From the IMG/VR virus record IMGVR_UViG_3300046167_000825, positions 62,001-126,000 of that record: a stretch of DNA of 64,000 nucleotides; one strand, 5' to 3'. How positions within the stretch are numbered: position 1 is the stretch's first letter; each line of letters opens with the position of its first letter. The translations under genes were made by a program, and so were the position numbers. The notes under the pieces were generated by a model. The model searched no databases and had not been told where the DNA came from. It worked only from the letters and a program-made list of their open reading frames with translations. Of the stretch, positions 3,449 to 19,216 are shown one piece after another.

Positions 3449-5320
3449 ATGGCTATTGTCACTATCGGTAGACCAGCGTATTTCTTTGTTCTCTTTGTAG
3501 ATGAAGACCAAAACCCCGTTTCTGTTGTGGGGACAACCATCCATCTTTTTACTTTTGATGAAGATGCCGAACTCGTTCTTGAAGATGGAGTTATGACACC
3601 CACCAATGAGGTTGGGAAGTTTATGTATTCCTTCATGATCCCAGAAGACTGGAGTTACGATTCCAATCTCTATGCCCACATGAGAGGGACAGACGATAAG
3701 GGTCTTAAATATCTCACAGAGCAACAGTTCGACTTATGGAATGAAGACGGGACACCTTATCGTAAGCCACCCCCACCACCTCCTATGTCGCATTGGAACA
3801 CAGACGATGGTGGTAACGGTGCTGATGGATTTGCTTCCAATACCGATTTGGCTTTCCAAACAGCACGAGTTCCGACAGCAGACGGTGCTGATGGCAACCT
3901 AGTCCTCTCAGAGGCATGGGGGAATACCACTCAAGACAGAGTGACAAAGACTGGTGTGATCGAAATAGACACAGTCGGACACACGACTGGCTTCGGTGGG
4001 GATTCTCAGTTTGTAGTTCGGATTGAGAGTCTTAATCAAGTTTATGAAGAGGTTGTTTTCCCAGCAACGGGGGACATATCTCAGTTCTCTCCTAGTTCGG
4101 TGATACACTTCACCATCACTGATTTCCAAGATGACAATCAAGACCGCAAGAAAGCCTTCGCTAAAGTAGTCCTTGATTTGGATATGTTGGTGAACTCAGT
4201 GGGGAGATGGGGCAGTGTGTTCCGTGTCACGACAACGCACATCACAGACACGGTTTCAGATGGGGGTGGTTCGTATAGCCACACCATCAATACTTTTTAT
4301 TATGATTCCAATCCCGAAACGCCCTCTTTTGATCAAGTGCTTTTTGAGGAAAACCTCCGTGTAGTTCGTCATCTCTCTGGGATTGCGTATTACACCAATG
4401 ACACAGTGTTCCGAGTGACCGTCAAAGACATCAATCACCTCAATAATGCTTCGGCTAAGGCATCCAAGAATCTTACAGTAGAAGCAGTTAATATCGATCT
4501 ACCGAAGTTGGAACACTCCCCTTTTGGAGTTGGTGCGGGTTATTTTTCGAGTTGGGACTCGAAGGTCAATCGGAACTTCGTGGATTACCAAAAAAACGAT
4601 TGGAAAGTCCAAGAGCCGAACTACCGTGTGATTGATCAGAATATTTATGTGCAAGCACACGCTGATGACACATGGAACAATGGGGTCACAAAGATATCCC
4701 CGTCCCTCCCAGTTCTGATTGACACTTACGAACAGACCTCCACCCCTCAATACGATGGTTTCGATGATGAAATCCACCGAACAGAGAGTGATTATGTCAC
4801 TGTTTGGGATAGCCTCAATCATTTGAACTCTGGTCAAGCGTTGGTGCAAGGGGGCTTCTTACAGATACCTCACACAGATTGGTCGCCTTATCTTCCTCTC
4901 GACCCTTTACCGAATCCCGATTACACGGGGATTGGGCAAGGTGCTTCTTATTATAGGACATTTGAAGCGACAGATGACGGAACAATCTCTCACTCAAACC
5001 TAGAGATGAGTATTTTCGGTCAGTTCGTTAATGGTTTGGAACAAGACCTCATCAATGGTGACCTTCAGATTTTCATCCGTAAGAAAGTTTCTGAGTCGGG
5101 TGCATCTGGTGTGAACTCCCCTCCTTTAATGGTTCATGGCACAGCATATAATCACACTCTTTTTGATGATGGTGTCACCAACGGTCAGATTCGTGAGTTT
5201 GTTGTGGGGAACACCCTCTCTGTCACTTTTGGTGGGTATGCTGTTAAAGAGGGGGTGTATATGGAAATCCGTATCACCAACCCTCTAGTAAAAATAGACT
5301 CAATGTCCGTGAGTTTTTAG
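3449..5320 (+). CDS. Putative virion structural protein (beta-rich, Ig-like N-terminus)
   Basis: 623 aa, T/G/D/N-rich, GAGGAGG RBS, structural context. Confidence 0.45.
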   Translation: MAIVTIGRPAYFFVLFVDEDQNPVSVVGTTIHLFTFDEDAELVLEDGVMTPTNEVGKFMYSFMIPEDWSYDSNLYAHMRGTDDKGLKYLTEQQFDLWNEDGTPYRKPPPPPPMSHWNTDDGGNGADGFASNTDLAFQTARVPTADGADGNLVLSEAWGNTTQDRVTKTGVIEIDTVGHTTGFGGDSQFVVRIESLNQVYEEVVFPATGDISQFSPSSVIHFTITDFQDDNQDRKKAFAKVVLDLDMLVNSVGRWGSVFRVTTTHITDTVSDGGGSYSHTINTFYYDSNPETPSFDQVLFEENLRVVRHLSGIAYYTNDTVFRVTVKDINHLNNASAKASKNLTVEAVNIDLPKLEHSPFGVGAGYFSSWDSKVNRNFVDYQKNDWKVQEPNYRVIDQNIYVQAHADDTWNNGVTKISPSLPVLIDTYEQTSTPQYDGFDDEIHRTESDYVTVWDSLNHLNSGQALVQGGFLQIPHTDWSPYLPLDPLPNPDYTGIGQGASYYRTFEATDDGTISHSNLEMSIFGQFVNGLEQDLINGDLQIFIRKKVSESGASGVNSPPLMVHGTAYNHTLFDDGVTNGQIREFVVGNTLSVTFGGYAVKEGVYMEIRITNPLVKIDSMSVSF

Positions 5321-8900: not shown

Positions 8901-8913
8901 ACTTTGCCATTTG

Positions 8914-8942
8914 GGATCGTTTCCAAACTCAACCTCCGTATA
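8914..8942 (+). promoter_or_regulatory. Bipartite promoter motif GGATCG-N15-TCCGTATA
   Basis: Exact consensus, 33 nt before ATG 8976. Confidence 0.75.
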
Positions 8943-8975
8943 TAAAACAGACCAGTTATATACGGAGGTTTTTTT
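8931..8975 (+). terminator. 15-bp perfect inverted repeat plus U-tract that contains the promoter -10 element and the downstream RBS
   Basis: aacctccgtatataa (8931-8945) / ttatatacggaggtt (8956-8970), followed by T-run. Confidence 0.75.
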
Positions 8976-10598: not shown

Positions 10599-10622
10599 AC
10601 ATTGACTAGACGATTTTCCAAC

Positions 10623-10656
10623 AGCCTCCCGTCAATTCTGTGGGAGGCTTTTTTTT
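10623..10656 (+). terminator. Intrinsic terminator
   Basis: agcctccc / gggaggct stem followed by T-run. Confidence 0.7.
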
Positions 10657-10667
10657 AGAGGTATGAA

Positions 10668-11249: not shown

Positions 11250-11289
11250 ACTGTCTATTCTCAACTATCATTGAACTGGATTGTATTCA

Positions 11290-12732
11290 ATGAAACTTAA
11301 TTTTATCTACCCCATAAAGGCTTCTGATTTACCCAAAGTCGTTGCGATTTCCATGAAGATGGGGGTTAAGGCTTTTTTGTCCAAAGCCCCCTTCTTGAAA
11401 GAGAAGGTAAAACCCTCCTTAAAGAAGTTACGCATTGAAACAGAAGAGGGACTGCCCGTGAGAGTTTCATATTCTCCCCTCACGGGATTGATAAAAGTCA
11501 ATCCCGAAATGCGACAAATCCGAGATAACCGAAAGGGAATCGTACCCAATCTTCTGTTGGCGTTGGGTATGGGCTATTATGACTTTGGTTTGAGTAAGTC
11601 CGACCAGTTGTATTGGAGAAACCTCACAAGGCGAGAAAAGGTGGACTTGACCCTTCTGAAGCGTTCATCCTTTTCAGTGAGCCAAGTGGGGAAACCTCGT
11701 GTTCTGTTTGCCACCGAGTTATTGAAACACACTATCTTTCAAACACCCTCTGCTCTTTTAGAAACCTTTTTTGATGTGGGGACATCCGATATCATCGAAT
11801 TATCTCCCACGAGATTCAGAGGGCTAGGTCTTACGAGGGGCGAACGGAAGGAACAAATTGAAACTTCCAGTTCTCTGATCGACAGAAAAACAGTGTCTTT
11901 AGAAGATGCTTTGGATATCGCTGGAATCACTGGGTTGACTGACGACATGCGAGAGGCTGGTTACCGAACTGAACTAGATTATGACCAATCGGGGATTATG
12001 GAGTTCAGAGCCTATTCTGGTTCAAGAGTCGTCCTACAAATGAAGCGTTACTTCTTTGATGATATCATCAAAAATGAATATTTCACCCTCAGTGAAGACT
12101 TGCAAAGACAAGGGTTAGGGATGAAAGCCTTCGCCACACAATTGACCTCAGCCATCAAACATGGTGTTGAAAAGATACAGTTGGTGGCAGAGAGGGAGGA
12201 TGCCTCTGGGTTGTTTGGATACAATGTTTGGTGGAGATTCGGTTTTGATGGTCACCTCGATAGTGGGAGATATGGGTCTTCCCTCGAAGCAAAAGCATGG
12301 TGGAAGCAAGCCGTTGTAGAAAAGATTCTTGGTGCATCCGATATGACTGCCCAGAAACAGTTCTACGGTATGGTCGAGAGGTTGAGACGAAAAACAGAGG
12401 AAGGCTCTTTCTCCAACTCAGCCTTCCAATATTTTATGGATGTCACCCTTGATGGTGAATACAGCAACTTAAAAGCCTTTCAAGCACCTAGTCGCAAAGA
12501 CTTCTTAGCCCTCGTGGATTTCTTTAATAAAGTTTCCCCCGAATCACCTTTTTTGAAAACAGAAGATTTGTCCTACAAGTCCCAGAGAATCCAGCGATTG
12601 ATGGAACTAGAAGGTTTTGAAGATTGGTGGCAACAATACGGGGATAAGTGGAACGCTTCATTGGATTTATCCTCTGGGGTAGAAAGCCCCTCAGTAGGTC
12701 TAGTTCGCAATTATATACGAGGACGGCAATGA
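11290..12732 (+). CDS. GNAT-like domain protein, paralogue 1
   Basis: FTLSEDLQRQGLG (acetyl-CoA motif A-like), GYNVWWRFGFDG, C-terminal LMELEGFEDWW...ASLDLS shared with paralogues 2 and 3. Confidence 0.6.
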   Translation: MKLNFIYPIKASDLPKVVAISMKMGVKAFLSKAPFLKEKVKPSLKKLRIETEEGLPVRVSYSPLTGLIKVNPEMRQIRDNRKGIVPNLLLALGMGYYDFGLSKSDQLYWRNLTRREKVDLTLLKRSSFSVSQVGKPRVLFATELLKHTIFQTPSALLETFFDVGTSDIIELSPTRFRGLGLTRGERKEQIETSSSLIDRKTVSLEDALDIAGITGLTDDMREAGYRTELDYDQSGIMEFRAYSGSRVVLQMKRYFFDDIIKNEYFTLSEDLQRQGLGMKAFATQLTSAIKHGVEKIQLVAEREDASGLFGYNVWWRFGFDGHLDSGRYGSSLEAKAWWKQAVVEKILGASDMTAQKQFYGMVERLRRKTEEGSFSNSAFQYFMDVTLDGEYSNLKAFQAPSRKDFLALVDFFNKVSPESPFLKTEDLSYKSQRIQRLMELEGFEDWWQQYGDKWNASLDLSSGVESPSVGLVRNYIRGRQ

Positions 12733-14771
12733 TATATGAAACAACCCCCAGACCCCCTTCGGATAGAAAAGGGTTTACGATAACATCCTTGAAAGACCTC
12801 TTTCATTTGGTTGATAAATACCCAACCAAAGAACCGTATATCATTGCTTGGGAATATGTTTTCATGGACTATTCTTGGGTTTGGATACATCCGAGAGTGT
12901 TGAAAGAAAGTAAACACATGCCAGAGTTCTGGATTCAGTTGGAGGACTGGAGAACAAAGGGCAATCTAGTTCGGTCAGATAACAAAAGTTGGGGTGATAA
13001 AAAGAAAAAATATGCCAAATTAACACAGCCCGTTGATGCAAAGAACTCGGAGGCACTTCGTTTTCCGAAGATTCTTGGAAGGGGTGTTCTTTCAATTGCT
13101 TATGGGACTTCACCAGAGAAAGCAGAACTCTTTAAGAAAAAATGTCTTGCTATCATAAAACGCTTTCAAGGGGATGATTCCCTCGCAGATATTAACGATC
13201 TGTACCCCCGAAAGATGAAGGTCACGGTTAGCGTTATCGAAACCTCTGAGAAATGGGTTATCAACTACGCAGAAGGAGTCCTAGAGATCAATGCTAGTGC
13301 GTTCTTGGGGCAGAGCCTTTCAAGGCAACAGATGCTGTTGTTGAGAGGATTCGGTTTGGCTTATTTCTCTTTGAAACTACGCCCGTCTGATATGAAGAAA
13401 TGGTTCAAGTATTACCGAGTCAAAAAACCCATTGCCAACCGTAAGTTCTATCACCCAGACATCACAAAACTTCAGATAAGTTGGGCAAGTGGTTTGGCTG
13501 ACTTCGTGTTGGGTGAAGAAACCTCTGTGATGAAGACCTTCAGAGAGTACTTCCAGAGAACCTCCGTTGGGGCTAGTCGGGTTGACCTCTCTCAGTTCCC
13601 AACTGAAATGGCTAGTTCGGTGATGGCATCTAGTATTGAACTAGCCGAACCCTTCAAAAACACTCCGTTTCAGAACCTTGAAACCAATGATATCCTAGAT
13701 ATTATGGGTTTGAGCGATGCTGCCGTTGCCACTCCCACTTTACTGGGAGGTTTGACGGGTGCTAATAAAGTGGTTGCCACTGACAACACCTTCAGAGATA
13801 TTGTGGCATACTCCATAGAAACCGATGAGGGGGGTAATGCTGAATGGGATCTTGGTGAGGGTAAAGCCGTATCAATTGCTAGAACCATTTGGTACAACAA
13901 GAAGACGGGTGTGTCTGCCATAGAGAATGACCTTTTTGAACTAGATGAGTCTTTTCAAGGGAAAGGTATTGGGGTTCGGATGGTTTCAAATCAGATAGAT
14001 ATGTGTCTAGCGAAGGGCATTCAAAAAATCATGTGCTATGCCGCAAGAGGTGATGATGAATATGTGGGCTACAAGGTGTGGCACAAAATGGGTTATGATG
14101 CCCTCCTAACTCCCAAGAATCTTGATGAGCACTCCGATGATGAAGATGGTTTCTATTGGTGGGTCTTGAAATCCCTAGAAAAGAAAATAAATGAATACCC
14201 CGAAGATATCTTGCACCGAGAAGTGGATCTTCTCTTACAAAAAGCCGTGGGGTCAAAGAAACCCAGTTATTTCAGAAGCCTCCCCACCCCATTCTTTTCT
14301 CGTTATATGAACATTCGCTTTGAAGAACCACCCTTTGCCAATGATTGGTCAGACCTCGTGCCGACTTTATCCAGAGCAGAGATTTTTCAATACTATTCTT
14401 TCTTGAGTGCTCAAATGAGTAAAGGTGACATCGTCAGTTTCAATCTGTTCAAAGACTTAGAACTCAGTATCACGAAAGACACCATACAAAATCTTATGGA
14501 TGTTGAAGGTTTTGAGGATTGGTGGGGTGAGAACGGTGGTGGATATAAAGCCACTCTTGATTTGAGTGAGGGTGTCAATAGCCCCGCTTATATGATTCTC
14601 TCTTTATACCGTCAAAAGAAGGGCTTGACAAAGATGTCCTCAGACGATCTATTGACTAAGGCAATGGGGTATCTTTCATCGAAAGACATCGCCCTCTTTG
14701 ATGAGGCTCGGAGAGAACTCCGTGTGGCTTCAAAATCTGTTTCTCGCATCGCCACTCTTTGGCTTGCATAA
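12729..14771 (+). CDS. GNAT-like domain protein, paralogue 2
   Basis: FELDESFQGKGIG, GYKVWHKMGYDA, LMDVEGFEDWW...ATLDLS. ATG 12729 overlaps the upstream TGA. Confidence 0.6.
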   Translation: MIYETTPRPPSDRKGFTITSLKDLFHLVDKYPTKEPYIIAWEYVFMDYSWVWIHPRVLKESKHMPEFWIQLEDWRTKGNLVRSDNKSWGDKKKKYAKLTQPVDAKNSEALRFPKILGRGVLSIAYGTSPEKAELFKKKCLAIIKRFQGDDSLADINDLYPRKMKVTVSVIETSEKWVINYAEGVLEINASAFLGQSLSRQQMLLLRGFGLAYFSLKLRPSDMKKWFKYYRVKKPIANRKFYHPDITKLQISWASGLADFVLGEETSVMKTFREYFQRTSVGASRVDLSQFPTEMASSVMASSIELAEPFKNTPFQNLETNDILDIMGLSDAAVATPTLLGGLTGANKVVATDNTFRDIVAYSIETDEGGNAEWDLGEGKAVSIARTIWYNKKTGVSAIENDLFELDESFQGKGIGVRMVSNQIDMCLAKGIQKIMCYAARGDDEYVGYKVWHKMGYDALLTPKNLDEHSDDEDGFYWWVLKSLEKKINEYPEDILHREVDLLLQKAVGSKKPSYFRSLPTPFFSRYMNIRFEEPPFANDWSDLVPTLSRAEIFQYYSFLSAQMSKGDIVSFNLFKDLELSITKDTIQNLMDVEGFEDWWGENGGGYKATLDLSEGVNSPAYMILSLYRQKKGLTKMSSDDLLTKAMGYLSSKDIALFDEARRELRVASKSVSRIATLWLA

Positions 14772-14818
14772 TTTATCTATATCTCTATTTATGTGATGAC
14801 TTTTATTAGGAGTATTCT

Positions 14819-17140
14819 ATGAAAAAACAAGCAAAACTCTCTCGGATTCCAGCAGAGGATGAAACTTCAATCGGTGTCCCTATGAAGTTTTTGGGGAAGC
14901 CTTACACAGTTACAGCCCCAGAAAGCCAAATGGATGAGATATCTATGTTGTGGGCGAACTGGAAACCCTCCATGACAATGTTGAATAAAAATAGTCTTTC
15001 ATACAAGACAGTCCCGAAGTTCAAACGGGGTGTTCGGAACTTGATGAGTAAGAACAGTTTTATGCTCTCTATGTCAGATGAGAAATGGGTTTTCAACTGG
15101 TCATTGGCTCAACAGACTCTCGAAATCAATGTCCAAGCGAAAATGTCGAAAGCGAAAATCAGACGATTGGCTGCCTTTGCTTTTGGGATTATGATGTATG
15201 ACACGGGCCTCAAGCCAAAATCTCGAATCTTTTTCAAGCGTAAAATCAAGAGAGAGAAGCCCCCATTACAAGGTATCCAAAAATATCTCGGTTTCTTGAA
15301 AGACGGTATGGCGTTGGGTCGTGCAAGAGCCGCTTTCGCTTTCGGCTTTATGATGCACTTGGAACAAGTCAGTAAAAAGTTTTTTGGTCATCCCCTCCAT
15401 GCAATGGTGGGAGAGGTCTTCTTCGACAAAAACAACTTTGTTGTTGATGAAGAAACACAATACACCCGCTTTGAGATAGATGAAGAAAGTCCTCTTGGTT
15501 ATGAGTTTGACTCAGAGCGTTTTGACCTTGTTTATAAAGGGAAATCAGAAAGTCAGATTGCTGCAATGAAACGGGTTACTGTTGCTGGGATGGATTATGA
15601 AACAGCCCTAGATTCTACTGGGATTGCCCCCTTCACAAACGCTTTGAAAAAATATATCACCAATGCCGTGAATGACCCTCAGAGCCGAAAACACTCTGAA
15701 GTTCTTAGGGGTTTAGGATTAGGTCAGTCTTCTCAGTTTGATCCCAACAAGTTCGAGTTACGGCTTAATGTTGGTTCAAGTAGTATAGGCTTTCGTCTTA
15801 CTTATAATGGCAGACATTGTTGTAACGGGTCTCGTAGTCAAATGACAAAAAACACACACTACAACGCTTTGTGTGAAGTGTCTAGTTCTTTTCAAGGATT
15901 GGGTGCTGGGATGCACATGTCGGCTTCTCAGATTGAACACGCAATGAAAACGGGTAAGAAGAAGATTAAGGTTTCTGCCGCTTTGGATGGTGGTTGGAGA
16001 ACTTGGAACAAGTTCGGTTTTGAGTCCAATAACCCAGTTATGGGTATAGTCAATGGTGCAAAAAGTTGGTGTGAGAAGTCTGTCGATGCCAAAATCTACG
16101 AGATGGGTTATGTAGATCGTCAACAAGTGATGACGGATCTCATGGTGGGTATGGTTCAACAACTCGGGGGGGCTTCTGCCTTCAGTGGTGCAAGCACGAC
16201 TCAAACTGGCCCCGTTACTCCAGTATTACCTTCAGATTCAAATGCAGATATTGCAGAAATCTTGAAGGAAGTGATTGATACCTCTGGTTCGTATTCGGGA
16301 GCGATGAAAAGGATGCTTCAAGCCGCTGGACTCCCACCAACGGCAAACAAAAGACATATAACCACTTGGTTTGCTGGTAATACCGTCACAGTGGCTCAAC
16401 AACAGAAAGTACATGATTATTTCACTTCGGGTAGTTCTGGCTTTGAAGATAAGTTCCGTAGATTGCGTGGTTATCCTCCTCGTGCGGGGCAATCAAGATC
16501 AAATGTTAATACCTCTCAAATGAACTCAGATATCAAAGGGTTAATAGAGTCTTTTGGTTGGTTTGGTGGTGAAGCCTTTAACGGCACATCCGTTCTTAAC
16601 CTCATCAAATCTCCTCAGTTCGATGTTGTTTTTGGTTATGATAACTTGCCTAAAATTGTGGCGTTCTTCCGTTCTAAAAACTATGAGGATCAAGTTCCAG
16701 CACTCACGAAAGCAAAACTCACTCCTAGAACACAGTACATGCAAGATTGTATGGAACTAGAGGGTTTCTCAAAGTGGTGGTCAGAGGGTGGTGGTCGCAA
16801 TTGGAGTGGAACACTTGACCTCACAGACGGGAAATACTCTATTGCTGTTTTGGCGATGGATCATTATCGAAAAATGAAAGTTCAAAACAAGCCCGATGTT
16901 TATGCAGAGGATTCAGCCTTTCAGCGTGCTCGTGTTGCAAGTGACATGACTTCTATTATTGATGCTGATATCCTTGAGAACTTTGTCAATATACCAGAAT
17001 CTGAAGAATGTGGTGGTGGTCTTCTTCGTATGGATATTGCTTTGATGGAACAAGCAACTCGTAATGCTCGTCTTGAAAAGAAGGACTTGGAAAAAGGTGG
17101 TCTTGTTCGTGTTGCTTCTCGTTGGTTGGGTGGAGAGTAA
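14819..17140 (+). CDS. GNAT-like domain protein, paralogue 3
   Basis: CEVSSSFQGLGAG, GGWRTWNKFGFES, CMELEGFSKWW...GTLDLT. AGGAG RBS. Confidence 0.6.
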   Translation: MKKQAKLSRIPAEDETSIGVPMKFLGKPYTVTAPESQMDEISMLWANWKPSMTMLNKNSLSYKTVPKFKRGVRNLMSKNSFMLSMSDEKWVFNWSLAQQTLEINVQAKMSKAKIRRLAAFAFGIMMYDTGLKPKSRIFFKRKIKREKPPLQGIQKYLGFLKDGMALGRARAAFAFGFMMHLEQVSKKFFGHPLHAMVGEVFFDKNNFVVDEETQYTRFEIDEESPLGYEFDSERFDLVYKGKSESQIAAMKRVTVAGMDYETALDSTGIAPFTNALKKYITNAVNDPQSRKHSEVLRGLGLGQSSQFDPNKFELRLNVGSSSIGFRLTYNGRHCCNGSRSQMTKNTHYNALCEVSSSFQGLGAGMHMSASQIEHAMKTGKKKIKVSAALDGGWRTWNKFGFESNNPVMGIVNGAKSWCEKSVDAKIYEMGYVDRQQVMTDLMVGMVQQLGGASAFSGASTTQTGPVTPVLPSDSNADIAEILKEVIDTSGSYSGAMKRMLQAAGLPPTANKRHITTWFAGNTVTVAQQQKVHDYFTSGSSGFEDKFRRLRGYPPRAGQSRSNVNTSQMNSDIKGLIESFGWFGGEAFNGTSVLNLIKSPQFDVVFGYDNLPKIVAFFRSKNYEDQVPALTKAKLTPRTQYMQDCMELEGFSKWWSEGGGRNWSGTLDLTDGKYSIAVLAMDHYRKMKVQNKPDVYAEDSAFQRARVASDMTSIIDADILENFVNIPESEECGGGLLRMDIALMEQATRNARLEKKDLEKGGLVRVASRWLGGE

Positions 17141-17188
17141 TGAAGAGCCTCGTTTCTCGCATTGCTTCTCGGCACATGGGTGATGAAG

Positions 17189-17217
17189 GGATCGCTTTCA
17201 ATAGGACTTTCCGTATA
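17189..17217 (+). promoter_or_regulatory. Bipartite promoter motif GGATCG-N15-TCCGTATA
   Basis: Exact consensus, 30 nt before ATG 17248. Confidence 0.75.
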
Positions 17218-17247
17218 AGAGTTGCACACCAACTTGAGGAGAGAACT

Positions 17248-17724
17248 ATGACAGCATCCTTCACCCCCGTGACTGAGTTACAACCGAGAAAGAAATGGCG
17301 TAAGAAAATCATTTACGCTGGGTTGTTCCTTGATGACACCACTAGAGCCAACTTGGTTCGGTGGTGGAATCAACAAGAAGGGACAGAAGCACTCCACGAA
17401 AAACAGATTGTCCACCACCTCACTATGGTTTTTAAGCCCTCTCAAGAAGATGTTGAGAATATGCCATTGGGTAAGATCGTGAAGATGTCCGTCATTGGCT
17501 ATGGTCAAGACGATAAAGCCCAAGCCCTTTTCGTTAAAATTGAGGGAGGGGTTCGGTCACAGAACACTAAACCTCATATCACGATGGCTATCTCTTCAAG
17601 TGGTTCTGCAAAGAACTCCAATGACTTGGACATTATCCCTTTAACGGGGCCGACCTTTGAGGGTATCTTTGGATACAGTGGTAAAGGGAAGGATTATCAA
17701 CAAATTGCTTGGGAATCCGAATAA
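17248..17724 (+). CDS. 2H phosphoesterase (a longer in-frame start at 17140 is possible)
   Basis: Two HxT motifs (HHLTMVF, PHITMA). GAGGAG RBS before 17248. Confidence 0.7.
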   Translation: MTASFTPVTELQPRKKWRKKIIYAGLFLDDTTRANLVRWWNQQEGTEALHEKQIVHHLTMVFKPSQEDVENMPLGKIVKMSVIGYGQDDKAQALFVKIEGGVRSQNTKPHITMAISSSGSAKNSNDLDIIPLTGPTFEGIFGYSGKGKDYQQIAWESE

Positions 17725-19155: not shown

Positions 19156-19184
19156 GGATCGTGTCCTAGATTCTTTTCCGTATA
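19156..19184 (+). promoter_or_regulatory. Bipartite promoter motif GGATCG-N15-TCCGTATA
   Basis: Exact consensus, 32 nt before ATG 19217. Confidence 0.75.
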
Positions 19185-19216
19185 TGCCTCTGAAACTATT
19201 TAACCCAGAGGTATTT

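What the first reader, a model, noticed from the sequence alone, without database searches (positions are those of the whole stretch)
17140..17724. 2H phosphoesterase with two plausible isoforms (anti-defence candidate)
Seen: an in-frame ATG at 17140 overlaps the stop of paralogue 3 and adds 36 aa containing the SRIASR motif. The bipartite promoter lies inside this extension and would drive a short form from 17248, which has its own RBS. Established: T4 Acb1 is a 2H phosphoesterase that degrades CBASS signals, and other 2H enzymes act in RNA repair. Inference: a packaged long form and a middle-expressed short form.
Basis: partly seen in the sequence, partly recalled or inferred. Interest (0 to 1): 0.6.

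Follow-up and report, generated by a model that had tools for sequence, protein, structure and literature searches.

The report
Nested two-form phage RNA-end phosphodiesterase
A marine jumbo phage gene encodes a small CNPase-like "two-histidine" phosphodiesterase that probably opens 2',3'-cyclic phosphate RNA ends, and a conserved promoter and second start inside the gene probably let it be made with or without a short N-terminal tag helix.

Summary
ORF 17140-17724 (194 aa) starts with an ATG that shares one base with the stop of the upstream gene. A full copy of the genome's bipartite promoter (GGGATCG-15 nt-TCCGTATA, 17188-17217) lies inside its first 36 codons. A Shine-Dalgarno sequence and an ATG at 17248 follow at the usual distance.

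The protein is a 2H phosphoesterase with two invariant HxT motifs. Its model matches the CNPase catalytic domain far better than any other fold, Acb1 included. Relatives are fused to CCA-adding or poly(A) polymerase heads, to topoisomerase IB plus a HAD "Swiss-army-knife" RNA-repair phosphatase, and to LigT. The best reading is therefore an RNA 2',3'-cyclic phosphodiesterase that heals RNA ends, not an Acb1-type signal nuclease.

Both forms have comparative support:
- Codons 2-13 evolve under protein-level constraint as strong as the core.
- The long frame is open in nine lineages, down to 43% identity.
- The promoter boxes are conserved at the DNA level.
- One syntenic relative has only the short form.

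The N-terminal helix motif recurs next to this 2H domain in distant proteins. It also recurs on the phage's GNAT-like paralogues and on its topoisomerase-IB-like protein, so it looks like a shared tag. Virion packaging and "middle" timing are untested.

The parts
17140..17724 (+). Long-form ORF, 194 aa (P0001)
   Evidence: The frame is open from an ATG at or next to the upstream stop in all 8 close relatives and in L019 at 43% identity.
17248..17724 (+). Short-form ORF, 158 aa (P0002). It holds the complete 2H domain.
   Evidence: Model residues 40-194 are confident. The structural match covers residues 48-183. Many family members start at the position that aligns with residue 55-59. A short-form-only gene with its own RBS exists in the syntenic relative L027.
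17140..17178 (+). Codons 1-13: N-terminal amphipathic helix motif (M K x L x S R I/V A S R H/Y)
   Evidence: pS 0.775, pN 0.233, ratio 0.30 in this frame. The other two frames give ratios of 1.0 and 2.1 and contain stops. Ser TCN/AGY and Arg CGN/AGR codon switches are seen. The motif recurs at N-termini of distant family members.
17188..17194 (+). Upstream promoter box, class A (GGGATCG)
   Evidence: In relatives this box is either GGGATCG or GCGGTT(G/C), and the encoded dipeptide changes between GI and AV.
17210..17217 (+). Downstream promoter box (TCCGTATA), -10-like
   Evidence: It is invariant in 7 of 8 relatives and degenerate in L006.
17236..17241 (+). Shine-Dalgarno sequence (GAGGAG) of the short form, 6 nt before the ATG at 17248
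   Evidence: AAGGAG or GAGGAG is kept in 6 of 8 relatives and AGGAG in L019.
17132..17137 (+). Shine-Dalgarno-like GGAGAG for the long form, inside the last codons (GGE) of paralogue 3
   Evidence: This layout suggests translational coupling (TAATG); that is inference.
17413..17424 (+). 2H motif 1 (H92-H93-L94-T95)
   Evidence: H93 is invariant and T95 is at least 90% conserved in 104 sequences.
17575..17583 (+). 2H motif 2 (H146-I147-T148)
   Evidence: H146 and T148 are invariant in 104 sequences.
14819..17140 (+). Paralogue 3 (773 aa). Its C-terminus carries the same motif (VRVASRWLGGE, from 17105).
   Evidence: The C-terminal motif is conserved in relatives including L019 and L027.
12728..14771 (+). 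Paralogue 2 (weakly GNAT-like). Its C-terminus carries the motif (VSRIATLWLA, from 14742).
8913..8942 (+). Nearest upstream promoter (class A). It is the only promoter site from which a transcript carrying the long-form start could come.
   Evidence: No other site with 3 or fewer mismatches lies between 8913 and 17188.

Best explanation
The gene encodes a compact 2H phosphoesterase of the CNPase / tRNA-ligase-CPD branch. Its most likely activity is hydrolysis of 2',3'-cyclic phosphate ends on RNA, or on ribonucleotide-containing nucleic acid. That would be an end-healing step serving repair of cleaved tRNA or RNA, and possibly working with the phage's topoisomerase-IB-like protein.

The gene is nested. 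A long polycistronic transcript from the promoter at 8913 would allow translation, coupled to the stop of paralogue 3, of a 194-aa form. This form carries an N-terminal amphipathic helix, a tag shared with the neighbouring GNAT-like paralogues and the TopoIB-like protein. A promoter embedded in codons 17-26 would start a transcript at about 17223-17227. That transcript cannot encode the tag and yields the 158-aa core enzyme from the ATG at 17248.

Shown here:
- the fold class and the catalytic motifs;
- the promoter motif and its canonical geometry;
- protein-level constraint on the tag;
- DNA-level constraint on the promoter boxes;
- natural short-only and tag-directly-fused variants.

Inferred, not shown:
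- enzymatic activity and substrate;
- activity of the promoter;
- existence and ratio of the two proteins;
- what the tag binds.
For: Fold:
- AlphaFold model from 104 sequences, pLDDT 86.8.
- Mouse CNPase catalytic domain matches at Z 11.9, rmsd 2.6 A over 132 residues. The next hits are all 2H proteins at Z below 7.
- The Foldseek top list is all CNPase, Trl1 KIN-CPD and LigT.

Sequence:
- Pfam tRNA_lig_CPD is the weak best hit in 8 of 9 close members. It is above its cut-off in some distant members: P0034 33.7 bits, P0020 28.4 bits.
- The best PDB sequence hit is fungal tRNA ligase, aligned at both HxT motifs, E 0.44.

Family and fusions:
- 1112 representatives at E of 0.001 or better, with the core matching query residues 55-185.
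- Fusions to PolyA_pol/CCA head, Topoisom_I + HAD_SAK_1, LigT and Peptidase_C39_2.
- The phage's own TopoIB-like ORF is 46% identical over 400 aa to a protein that continues directly into this 2H domain and HAD_SAK_1.

Isoforms:
- pN/pS is 0.30 in codons 2-13 against 0.28 in the core. In codons 14-36 it is 0.70, with lowered pS.
- 25 of 25 promoters are followed by an RBS and ATG.
- TCCGTATA is invariant. An in-frame deletion is seen in L006, where the -10-like box has decayed but the long ORF persists.
- L019 keeps the long form and the internal AGGAG-ATG.
- L027 has the short form only.
- the motif is enriched next to the 2H domain, 14 hits against 0.76 in shuffles.
Against: - No RNA or protein data. 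The two RNA-labelled runs gave only tiny contigs, one of them chimeric, and say nothing about 5' ends.
- The window's protein is below the Pfam cut-off for tRNA_lig_CPD (14.5 against 23 bits).
- No RNA ligase (PF09414, PF09511), RtcB, CCA enzyme or HAD_SAK was found in the 289-kb record. The record is only about 66% complete, and two of the control searches could not ring. Only one tRNA gene is present.
- A repair pathway therefore cannot be assembled from this record.
- Fold does not fix substrate. 2H enzymes also cleave 2'-5' oligoadenylate and cyclic dinucleotides.
- The N-terminal helix has low model confidence (pLDDT about 64; residues 17-38 are below 50).
Confidence: 0.6

Rival explanations
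1. Only the short form is made. The 108 nt upstream are promoter DNA that merely happens to be an open frame continuous with the gene.
For: The promoter, RBS and ATG geometry is the same as at all 25 strict promoter sites. Gene callers chose the internal start in L006 and L007. L027 has only a short form. Codons 14-36 are poorly constrained as protein.
Against: Codons 2-13 show pN/pS 0.30 with saturated synonymous change and Ser/Arg codon-family switches, while the other frames have stops. The frame is open with an ATG at the upstream stop in 9 lineages down to 43% identity. An in-frame indel is seen in L006. The same helix motif heads distant homologues that have no spacer.
Confidence: 0.12
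2. Only the long form matters. The internal promoter mainly serves to boost transcription of the gene's 3' part and of the downstream small genes, and Met37 is an ordinary internal methionine.
For: Most gene calls in relatives are the long form. The long ORF persists in L006, where the -10-like box has decayed.
Against: A transcript that starts after 17217 cannot encode the long form, yet it carries a strong, conserved SD and ATG. Met37 and its SD are conserved even in L019. The short form equals the complete confidently folded domain. Stand-alone family members of 130-160 aa are the majority. L027 is short-only.
Confidence: 0.13
3. It is an Acb1-like anti-CBASS or anti-cyclic-oligonucleotide nuclease that destroys immune second messengers.
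For: It has the same superfamily and the same HxT chemistry. Acb1 (7t27) is among the structural hits at Z 6.7-7.4. One of 9 members touches Pfam Acb1 at E 0.1. Phage 2H enzymes are proposed to act on cyclic phosphates in conflicts (PMC7824862).
Against: CNPase scores almost twice as high as Acb1. Pfam Acb1 is not matched by the window's protein. The fusion partners (CCA/poly(A) polymerase head, HAD_SAK_1, LigT, TopoIB) point to polynucleotide ends rather than free signals.
Confidence: 0.1
4. The long form is a virion-packaged, injected enzyme, with the N-terminal motif acting as a capsid-targeting signal.
For: A short terminal motif is shared by several enzymes. This recalls the N-terminal capsid-targeting sequences of T4 (own knowledge). 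Relatives of the domain occur in very large multi-domain phage proteins (1421-2547 aa).
Against: No structural context: the neighbours are a DnaQ-like exonuclease, an SNF2 helicase and a DnaB helicase. The motif sits at N-terminal, C-terminal or internal positions. No protease-site pattern was recognised. There are no proteomic data.
Confidence: 0.08

Closest known systems
CNPase catalytic domain and the CPD domain of fungal/plant tRNA ligase Trl1 (2H superfamily; Pfam PF05881, PF08302)
   Same: Two HxT motifs. It is the best structural match by a wide margin (Z 11.9-12.5, rmsd 2.6-2.7 A over 132 residues). It also gives the only recurring Pfam and PDB sequence signal. The expected chemistry is opening of a 2',3'-cyclic phosphate.
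   Different: It is much smaller (about 140 aa core against about 215-250) and about 17% identical. The window's protein is below the Pfam cut-off. It is not fused to a kinase or ligase. It is viral and carries an N-terminal tag helix.
Phage anti-CBASS nuclease Acb1 (T4 57B / FBB1; PDB 7t27; Pfam PF23474)
   Same: A small phage-encoded 2H enzyme of similar size with the same catalytic motifs.
   Different: The structural score is no better than for any 2H family (Z 6.7-7.4). There is no Pfam match. The family's domain fusions point to RNA ends, not free cyclic oligonucleotides.
Nested in-frame phage genes with an internal promoter or start (for example T4 gene 49 endonuclease VII long/short forms, T7 gene 4A/4B; own knowledge)
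   Same: An internal in-frame start with its own SD. The two products differ by an N-terminal segment. A promoter inside the longer reading frame, as in T4 gene 49.
   Different: Here the promoter boxes are read as codons of the long form and switch class between relatives, changing the encoded dipeptide. The products have not been observed.
'Swiss-army-knife' RNA-repair proteins with a HAD_SAK_1 phosphatase, and CCA-adding enzymes with a cyclic-phosphodiesterase module
   Same: The same 2H domain is fused to HAD_SAK_1 + Topoisom_I and to PolyA_pol/CCA heads in other metagenomic proteins.
   Different: In this phage the modules are separate genes. HAD_SAK, a CCA enzyme and an RNA ligase were not found in the incomplete record.

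Membership tests
2H phosphoesterase superfamily | Two H-x-T/S motifs, one in each lobe | tested here: met
   H93-L-T95 and H146-I-T148. H93, H146 and T148 are invariant and T95 is at least 90% conserved in 104 sequences.
2H phosphoesterase superfamily | Bilobed alpha+beta fold shared with solved 2H enzymes | tested here: met
   Model pLDDT 86.8. The top 14 VIA hits and the whole Foldseek top list are 2H proteins.
2H phosphoesterase superfamily | Phosphoesterase activity on cyclic or 2'-5' phosphodiesters | not testable with these tools
   Needs an enzyme assay.
CNPase / tRNA-ligase CPD branch (PF05881, PF08302) | Pfam model matched above the gathering score | tested here: not met
   tRNA_lig_CPD scores 14.5 bits against a cut-off of 23 for the window's protein. 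8 of 9 close members hit weakly. Some distant family members pass: 24.9-33.7 bits.
CNPase / tRNA-ligase CPD branch (PF05881, PF08302) | Closest structural neighbour is CNPase or Trl1-CPD rather than another 2H branch | tested here: met
   2xmi scores Z 11.9-12.5 against 7.4 or less for all other branches.
CNPase / tRNA-ligase CPD branch (PF05881, PF08302) | Product is a 2'-phosphate from a 2',3'-cyclic phosphate | not testable with these tools
   Needs product analysis.
Acb1 anti-CBASS nuclease (PF23474) | Pfam Acb1 model matched | tested here: not met
   No hit for the window's protein at E up to 1. 1 of 9 relatives hits at E 0.1.
Acb1 anti-CBASS nuclease (PF23474) | Specific structural similarity above the generic 2H level | tested here: not met
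   7t27 scores Z 6.7-7.4, tied with plant CPDase, LigT and drCPDase.
Acb1 anti-CBASS nuclease (PF23474) | Cleaves 3'3'-cGAMP or cA3 | not testable with these tools
   Needs an enzyme assay.
LigT / 2'-5' RNA ligase-like (PF02834, PF13563) | Pfam model matched | tested here: not met
   No hit. Structural Z is about 6.
Nested two-product gene with an internal promoter | In-frame internal ATG with its own SD, downstream of a promoter inside the long ORF | tested here: met
   Conserved in relatives.
Nested two-product gene with an internal promoter | N-terminal extension under protein-level selection | tested here: met
   pN/pS 0.30 in codons 2-13. The control frames give 1.0 and 2.1 with stops.
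Nested two-product gene with an internal promoter | Two transcripts and two proteins observed | tested here: inconclusive
   The RNA runs hold only fragments as contigs. No proteomics.

The most novel reading that the evidence does not exclude
The short helix [K/R]-[I/V]-A-[S/A]-R-[W/H/Y/F] may be a portable docking tag. It would bring otherwise separate phage enzymes to one partner or one complex: the 2H cyclic phosphodiesterase, two GNAT-like paralogues and a topoisomerase-IB-like protein. This would be a split, non-covalent version of the fused TopoIB-2H-HAD 'Swiss-army-knife' proteins. The promoter written into the linker codons would let the phage switch the phosphodiesterase between a tagged (recruited) and an untagged (free) state, and evolution re-times this by swapping the upstream promoter box class.
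Probability: 0.2. Interest if true: 0.7.

Novelty: new variant of a known kind. Interest (0 to 1): 0.5.

Why it matters
2H enzymes in jumbo phages have been noted as probable handlers of 2',3'-cyclic phosphates (PMC7824862). This family has more than 1000 representative clusters and is mostly below the cut-off of every Pfam model it touches. It therefore marks a widespread, uncharacterised end-healing module of marine viruses.

The locus is also a clean natural example of dual coding. The promoter boxes are read as codons, and the encoded dipeptide flips (GI to AV) whenever the promoter class flips.

If the shared terminal helix proves to be a recruitment tag, it would give a handle on how large phages assemble nucleic-acid repair or counter-defence enzymes. 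It would also link topoisomerase IB, which can leave 2',3'-cyclic phosphate ends at ribonucleotides, with a cyclic phosphodiesterase.

Tried and rejected
- Megablast and tblastn of the locus and the protein against the phage collection: no match. The SNF2 neighbour's best hit is a 485-kb uncultured phage at 56%.
- Viral-contig scan: no relatives. Metagenome scan: only two loci, one identical.
- PDB sequence search with the 9-sequence profile: nothing. With the 104-sequence profile: only E about 0.4 to fungal tRNA ligase.
- Sigma-70 consensus scan: no site in the extension, and fewer sites than in shuffles. The phage promoters are not sigma-70-like.
- RNA evidence: two runs with 5-7% of words. 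When laid, they gave two 150-nt contigs inside paralogue 3 and one chimeric 219-nt contig. There is no information on transcript ends.
- Search of the record for partners (RNA ligases PF09414 and PF09511, RtcB, CCA enzyme, HAD_SAK_1): none found. For PF09511 and PF10307 the controls did not ring either, so absence is not shown. Two AAA_33 kinases exist. One tRNA gene.
- Temporal class of the two promoter classes: genes behind both are non-structural or unknown, so 'middle' can be neither supported nor rejected.
- ESM Atlas for paralogue 3: only a sub-threshold GNAT lead.
No verdict.
- A promoter motif for the more distant L019 phage could not be defined.
- No alternative genetic code was needed or used.
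Full report
**Where the window lies.** The window is bases 62001-126000 of a 289-kb IMG/VR virus record judged about 66% complete. Homologues come from marine metagenomes. The neighbouring SNF2 helicase is closest (56%) to a 485-kb uncultured phage. This is an uncultured marine jumbo phage.

**The observation.** ORF 17140-17724 (194 aa) begins with an ATG that shares its A with the TAA stop of the upstream 773-aa ORF.
- The first 36 codons end at an in-frame ATG at 17248, preceded by GAGGAG with a 6-nt spacer.
- Inside the extension lie GGGATCG (17188-17194) and TCCGTATA (17210-17217).
- TCCGTATA is strongly over-represented: 12 in the window against 0.67 expected, and 40 in the record.
- A strict search for G[GC]G[AG]T[CT]G, 13-17 nt, TCCGTATA finds 25 sites in the record. 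All have exactly 15 nt of spacing, and each is followed by an RBS and ATG 16-44 nt downstream.
- There are two upstream-box classes: GGGATCG (11 sites) and GCGGTTG (12 sites).
- The site in this gene is a perfect class-A copy with its ATG at +30.

These promoters are not sigma-70-like.

**Is the extension translated?** Eight distinct relatives (62-95% identical) are syntenic: three paralogues, this gene, small ORFs, SNF2, DnaB. In all of them the 36-codon frame is open and starts with an ATG at or 1-3 nt after the upstream stop. This holds even in the two contigs where gene callers picked the internal start.

Nei-Gojobori counts over all pairs:

| Region | pS | pN | pN/pS |
|---|---|---|---|
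| Codons 2-13 | 0.775 | 0.233 | 0.30 |
| Core | – | – | 0.28 |
| Codons 14-36 | 0.50 | 0.35 | 0.70 |

- For codons 2-13 the other two frames give ratios of 1.0 and 2.1 and contain stops. Serine switches between TCN and AGY codons, and arginine between CGN and AGR.
- Codons 14-36 hold the promoter. This is the pattern expected when DNA-level constraint replaces protein-level constraint.
- TCCGTATA is invariant in 7 of 8 sequences.
- The upstream box is either GGGATCG or GCGGTT(G/C), and the encoded dipeptide changes with it (GI or AV). On a weakly supported tree this needs at least two class switches.
- In L006 the downstream box has decayed and an in-frame deletion has occurred, yet the long ORF persists.
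- A relative at 43% identity (L019) keeps the same layout: tag helix, spacer, AGGAG-ATG, core. Its long-form start comes right after an intrinsic terminator.
- Another syntenic relative at 41% (L027) has an extra gene inserted upstream and only a short form with its own strong RBS.

Both products are therefore plausible proteins, and the short form is sufficient as an enzyme.

**How each form would be expressed (inference).** No other promoter site with 3 or fewer mismatches lies between 8913 and 17188. The long form must therefore be the last cistron of a transcript of about 9 kb. That transcript also passes a terminator-like hairpin near 10.6 kb. The long form would be initiated by coupling to the stop of paralogue 3, whose final GGE codons supply a GGAGAG Shine-Dalgarno sequence. 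The internal promoter would start a transcript a few bases after 17217 that can encode only the short form. RNA runs gave no usable information.

**What the protein is.**
- Pfam gives only a sub-threshold hit to the fungal tRNA-ligase CPD domain, repeated in 8 of 9 relatives.
- PHROGs gives an unannotated family.
- An exhaustive profile search found 1112 representative proteins (251 at E of 1e-10 or better). Most are 130-160 aa and align to residues 55-185.
- In an alignment of 104 of them, H93, H146 and T148 are invariant and T95 nearly so.
- The AlphaFold model built on that alignment has pLDDT 86.8. Residues 40-194 are confident and residues 17-38 are below 50.
- The model matches the mouse CNPase catalytic domain at Z 11.9, rmsd 2.6 A over 132 residues. 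Every other 2H branch scores below 7: plant CPDase, Acb1 7t27 (Z 6.7), drCPDase, LigT, Usb1, viral 2'-5' PDEs. An earlier shallow model gave the same ranking, and Foldseek agrees.

The protein is thus a minimal member of the CNPase / Trl1-CPD branch, not an Acb1 relative.

**Functional context.** Larger proteins containing this domain combine it with several partners:
- PolyA_pol/CCA-adding heads (P0032, P0054, P0058);
- Topoisom_I plus HAD_SAK_1, the HAD phosphatase of 'Swiss-army-knife' RNA-repair proteins (P0078, P0101);
- a second LigT-type 2H domain (P0086);
- C39-like peptidases.

These partners act on polynucleotide ends, which favours RNA>p end healing.

The phage itself encodes a 976-aa protein (G000:250134-253064) with a Topoisom_I core. 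It is 46% identical over 400 aa to P0078, and P0078 continues directly into this 2H domain. That is a Rosetta-stone hint that the two proteins work together. From own knowledge, type IB topoisomerases can leave 2',3'-cyclic phosphate ends at ribonucleotides, and the E. coli CCA enzyme carries its own cyclic phosphodiesterase for tRNA 3'-end repair.

Against a complete pathway: no RNA ligase, RtcB, CCA enzyme or HAD_SAK was found in the incomplete record, and it holds only one tRNA gene. Jumbo-phage 2H enzymes have been discussed as specialists for 2',3'-cyclic phosphates in tRNA-cleavage conflicts (PMC7824862). The counter-defence idea therefore survives in that form.

**The tag.** In the record, the motif [S/T/V]R[I/V]A[S/T/R]x[W/H/Y] occurs only in four places:
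- at the C-termini of paralogues 2 and 3;
- at the N-terminus of this gene;
- in the TopoIB-like protein, which has a second looser copy about 70 residues upstream.

The paralogues' C-terminal copies are conserved down to L019 and L027. Among the 2H-family proteins fetched, a related pattern occurs 14 times against 0.76 in shuffles. It always sits at the N-terminus or within about 25 residues of the domain's edge. In some stand-alone members it is joined directly to the core (P0017).

The sequence is an amphipathic helix. It could be a docking peptide for a common partner, a membrane anchor or a packaging signal, and none of these could be tested. The paralogues are only weakly GNAT-like. The surrounding genes are replication-type, which gives no support to virion packaging.

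**Verdict.**
- It is wrong in leaning on Acb1. The packaging and timing claims remain untested.
- The enzyme class is known. The family, its tag and the promoter-in-codons arrangement make it a new variant of a known kind, of moderate interest.

Noticed in passing
whole record; in the window e.g. 8913, 17188, 19155, 31648, 37759, 46943: A genome-wide bipartite promoter with two discrete upstream-box classes, GGGATCG and GCGGTTG, always 15 nt before TCCGTATA. Class-B leaders often contain caatcaatcaa. The system is shared by the related metagenomic phages but not by L019 or L020.
   Followed up: partly
window 8935-8966: TCCGTATA and its reverse complement lie 16 nt apart. They form a hairpin in the leader of ORF 8976 that includes its GGAGG ribosome-binding site, which may be a translational control element.
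   Followed up: no
window about 10610-10667; L019 about 3925-3982: A strong hairpin with a T-run (terminator-like) is followed at once by the RBS and ATG of the next gene: the DnaQ-like exonuclease in the window and the 2H gene in L019. This suggests attenuating terminators inside operons.
   Followed up: no
G000:C1:250134-253064 (outside the window; L025): A 976-aa protein with an N-terminal domain, a Topoisom_I core, two copies of the tag motif and a long charged C-terminal half. It is 46% identical over 400 aa to a metagenomic protein that is fused to this 2H domain and a HAD_SAK_1 phosphatase.
   Followed up: partly
window 11281-17140: Three tandem, diverged paralogues (483, about 681 and 773 aa) with a weak GNAT signature and a shared C-terminal domain. 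Paralogues 2 and 3 end in the tag motif. All are conserved in synteny in every relative.
   Followed up: partly
L027 4413-5000: In a 41%-identical syntenic relative, a terminator, a promoter (GGGATCG-15 nt-ACCGTATA) and a 130-aa gene are inserted between paralogue 3 and a short-form-only 2H gene.
   Followed up: partly
window 19177-19216: The longest ORF of the SNF2 helicase starts at an ATG that overlaps the promoter's TCCGTATA box. The real start is probably the ATG 30 nt further on (19214), which has an RBS.
   Followed up: no
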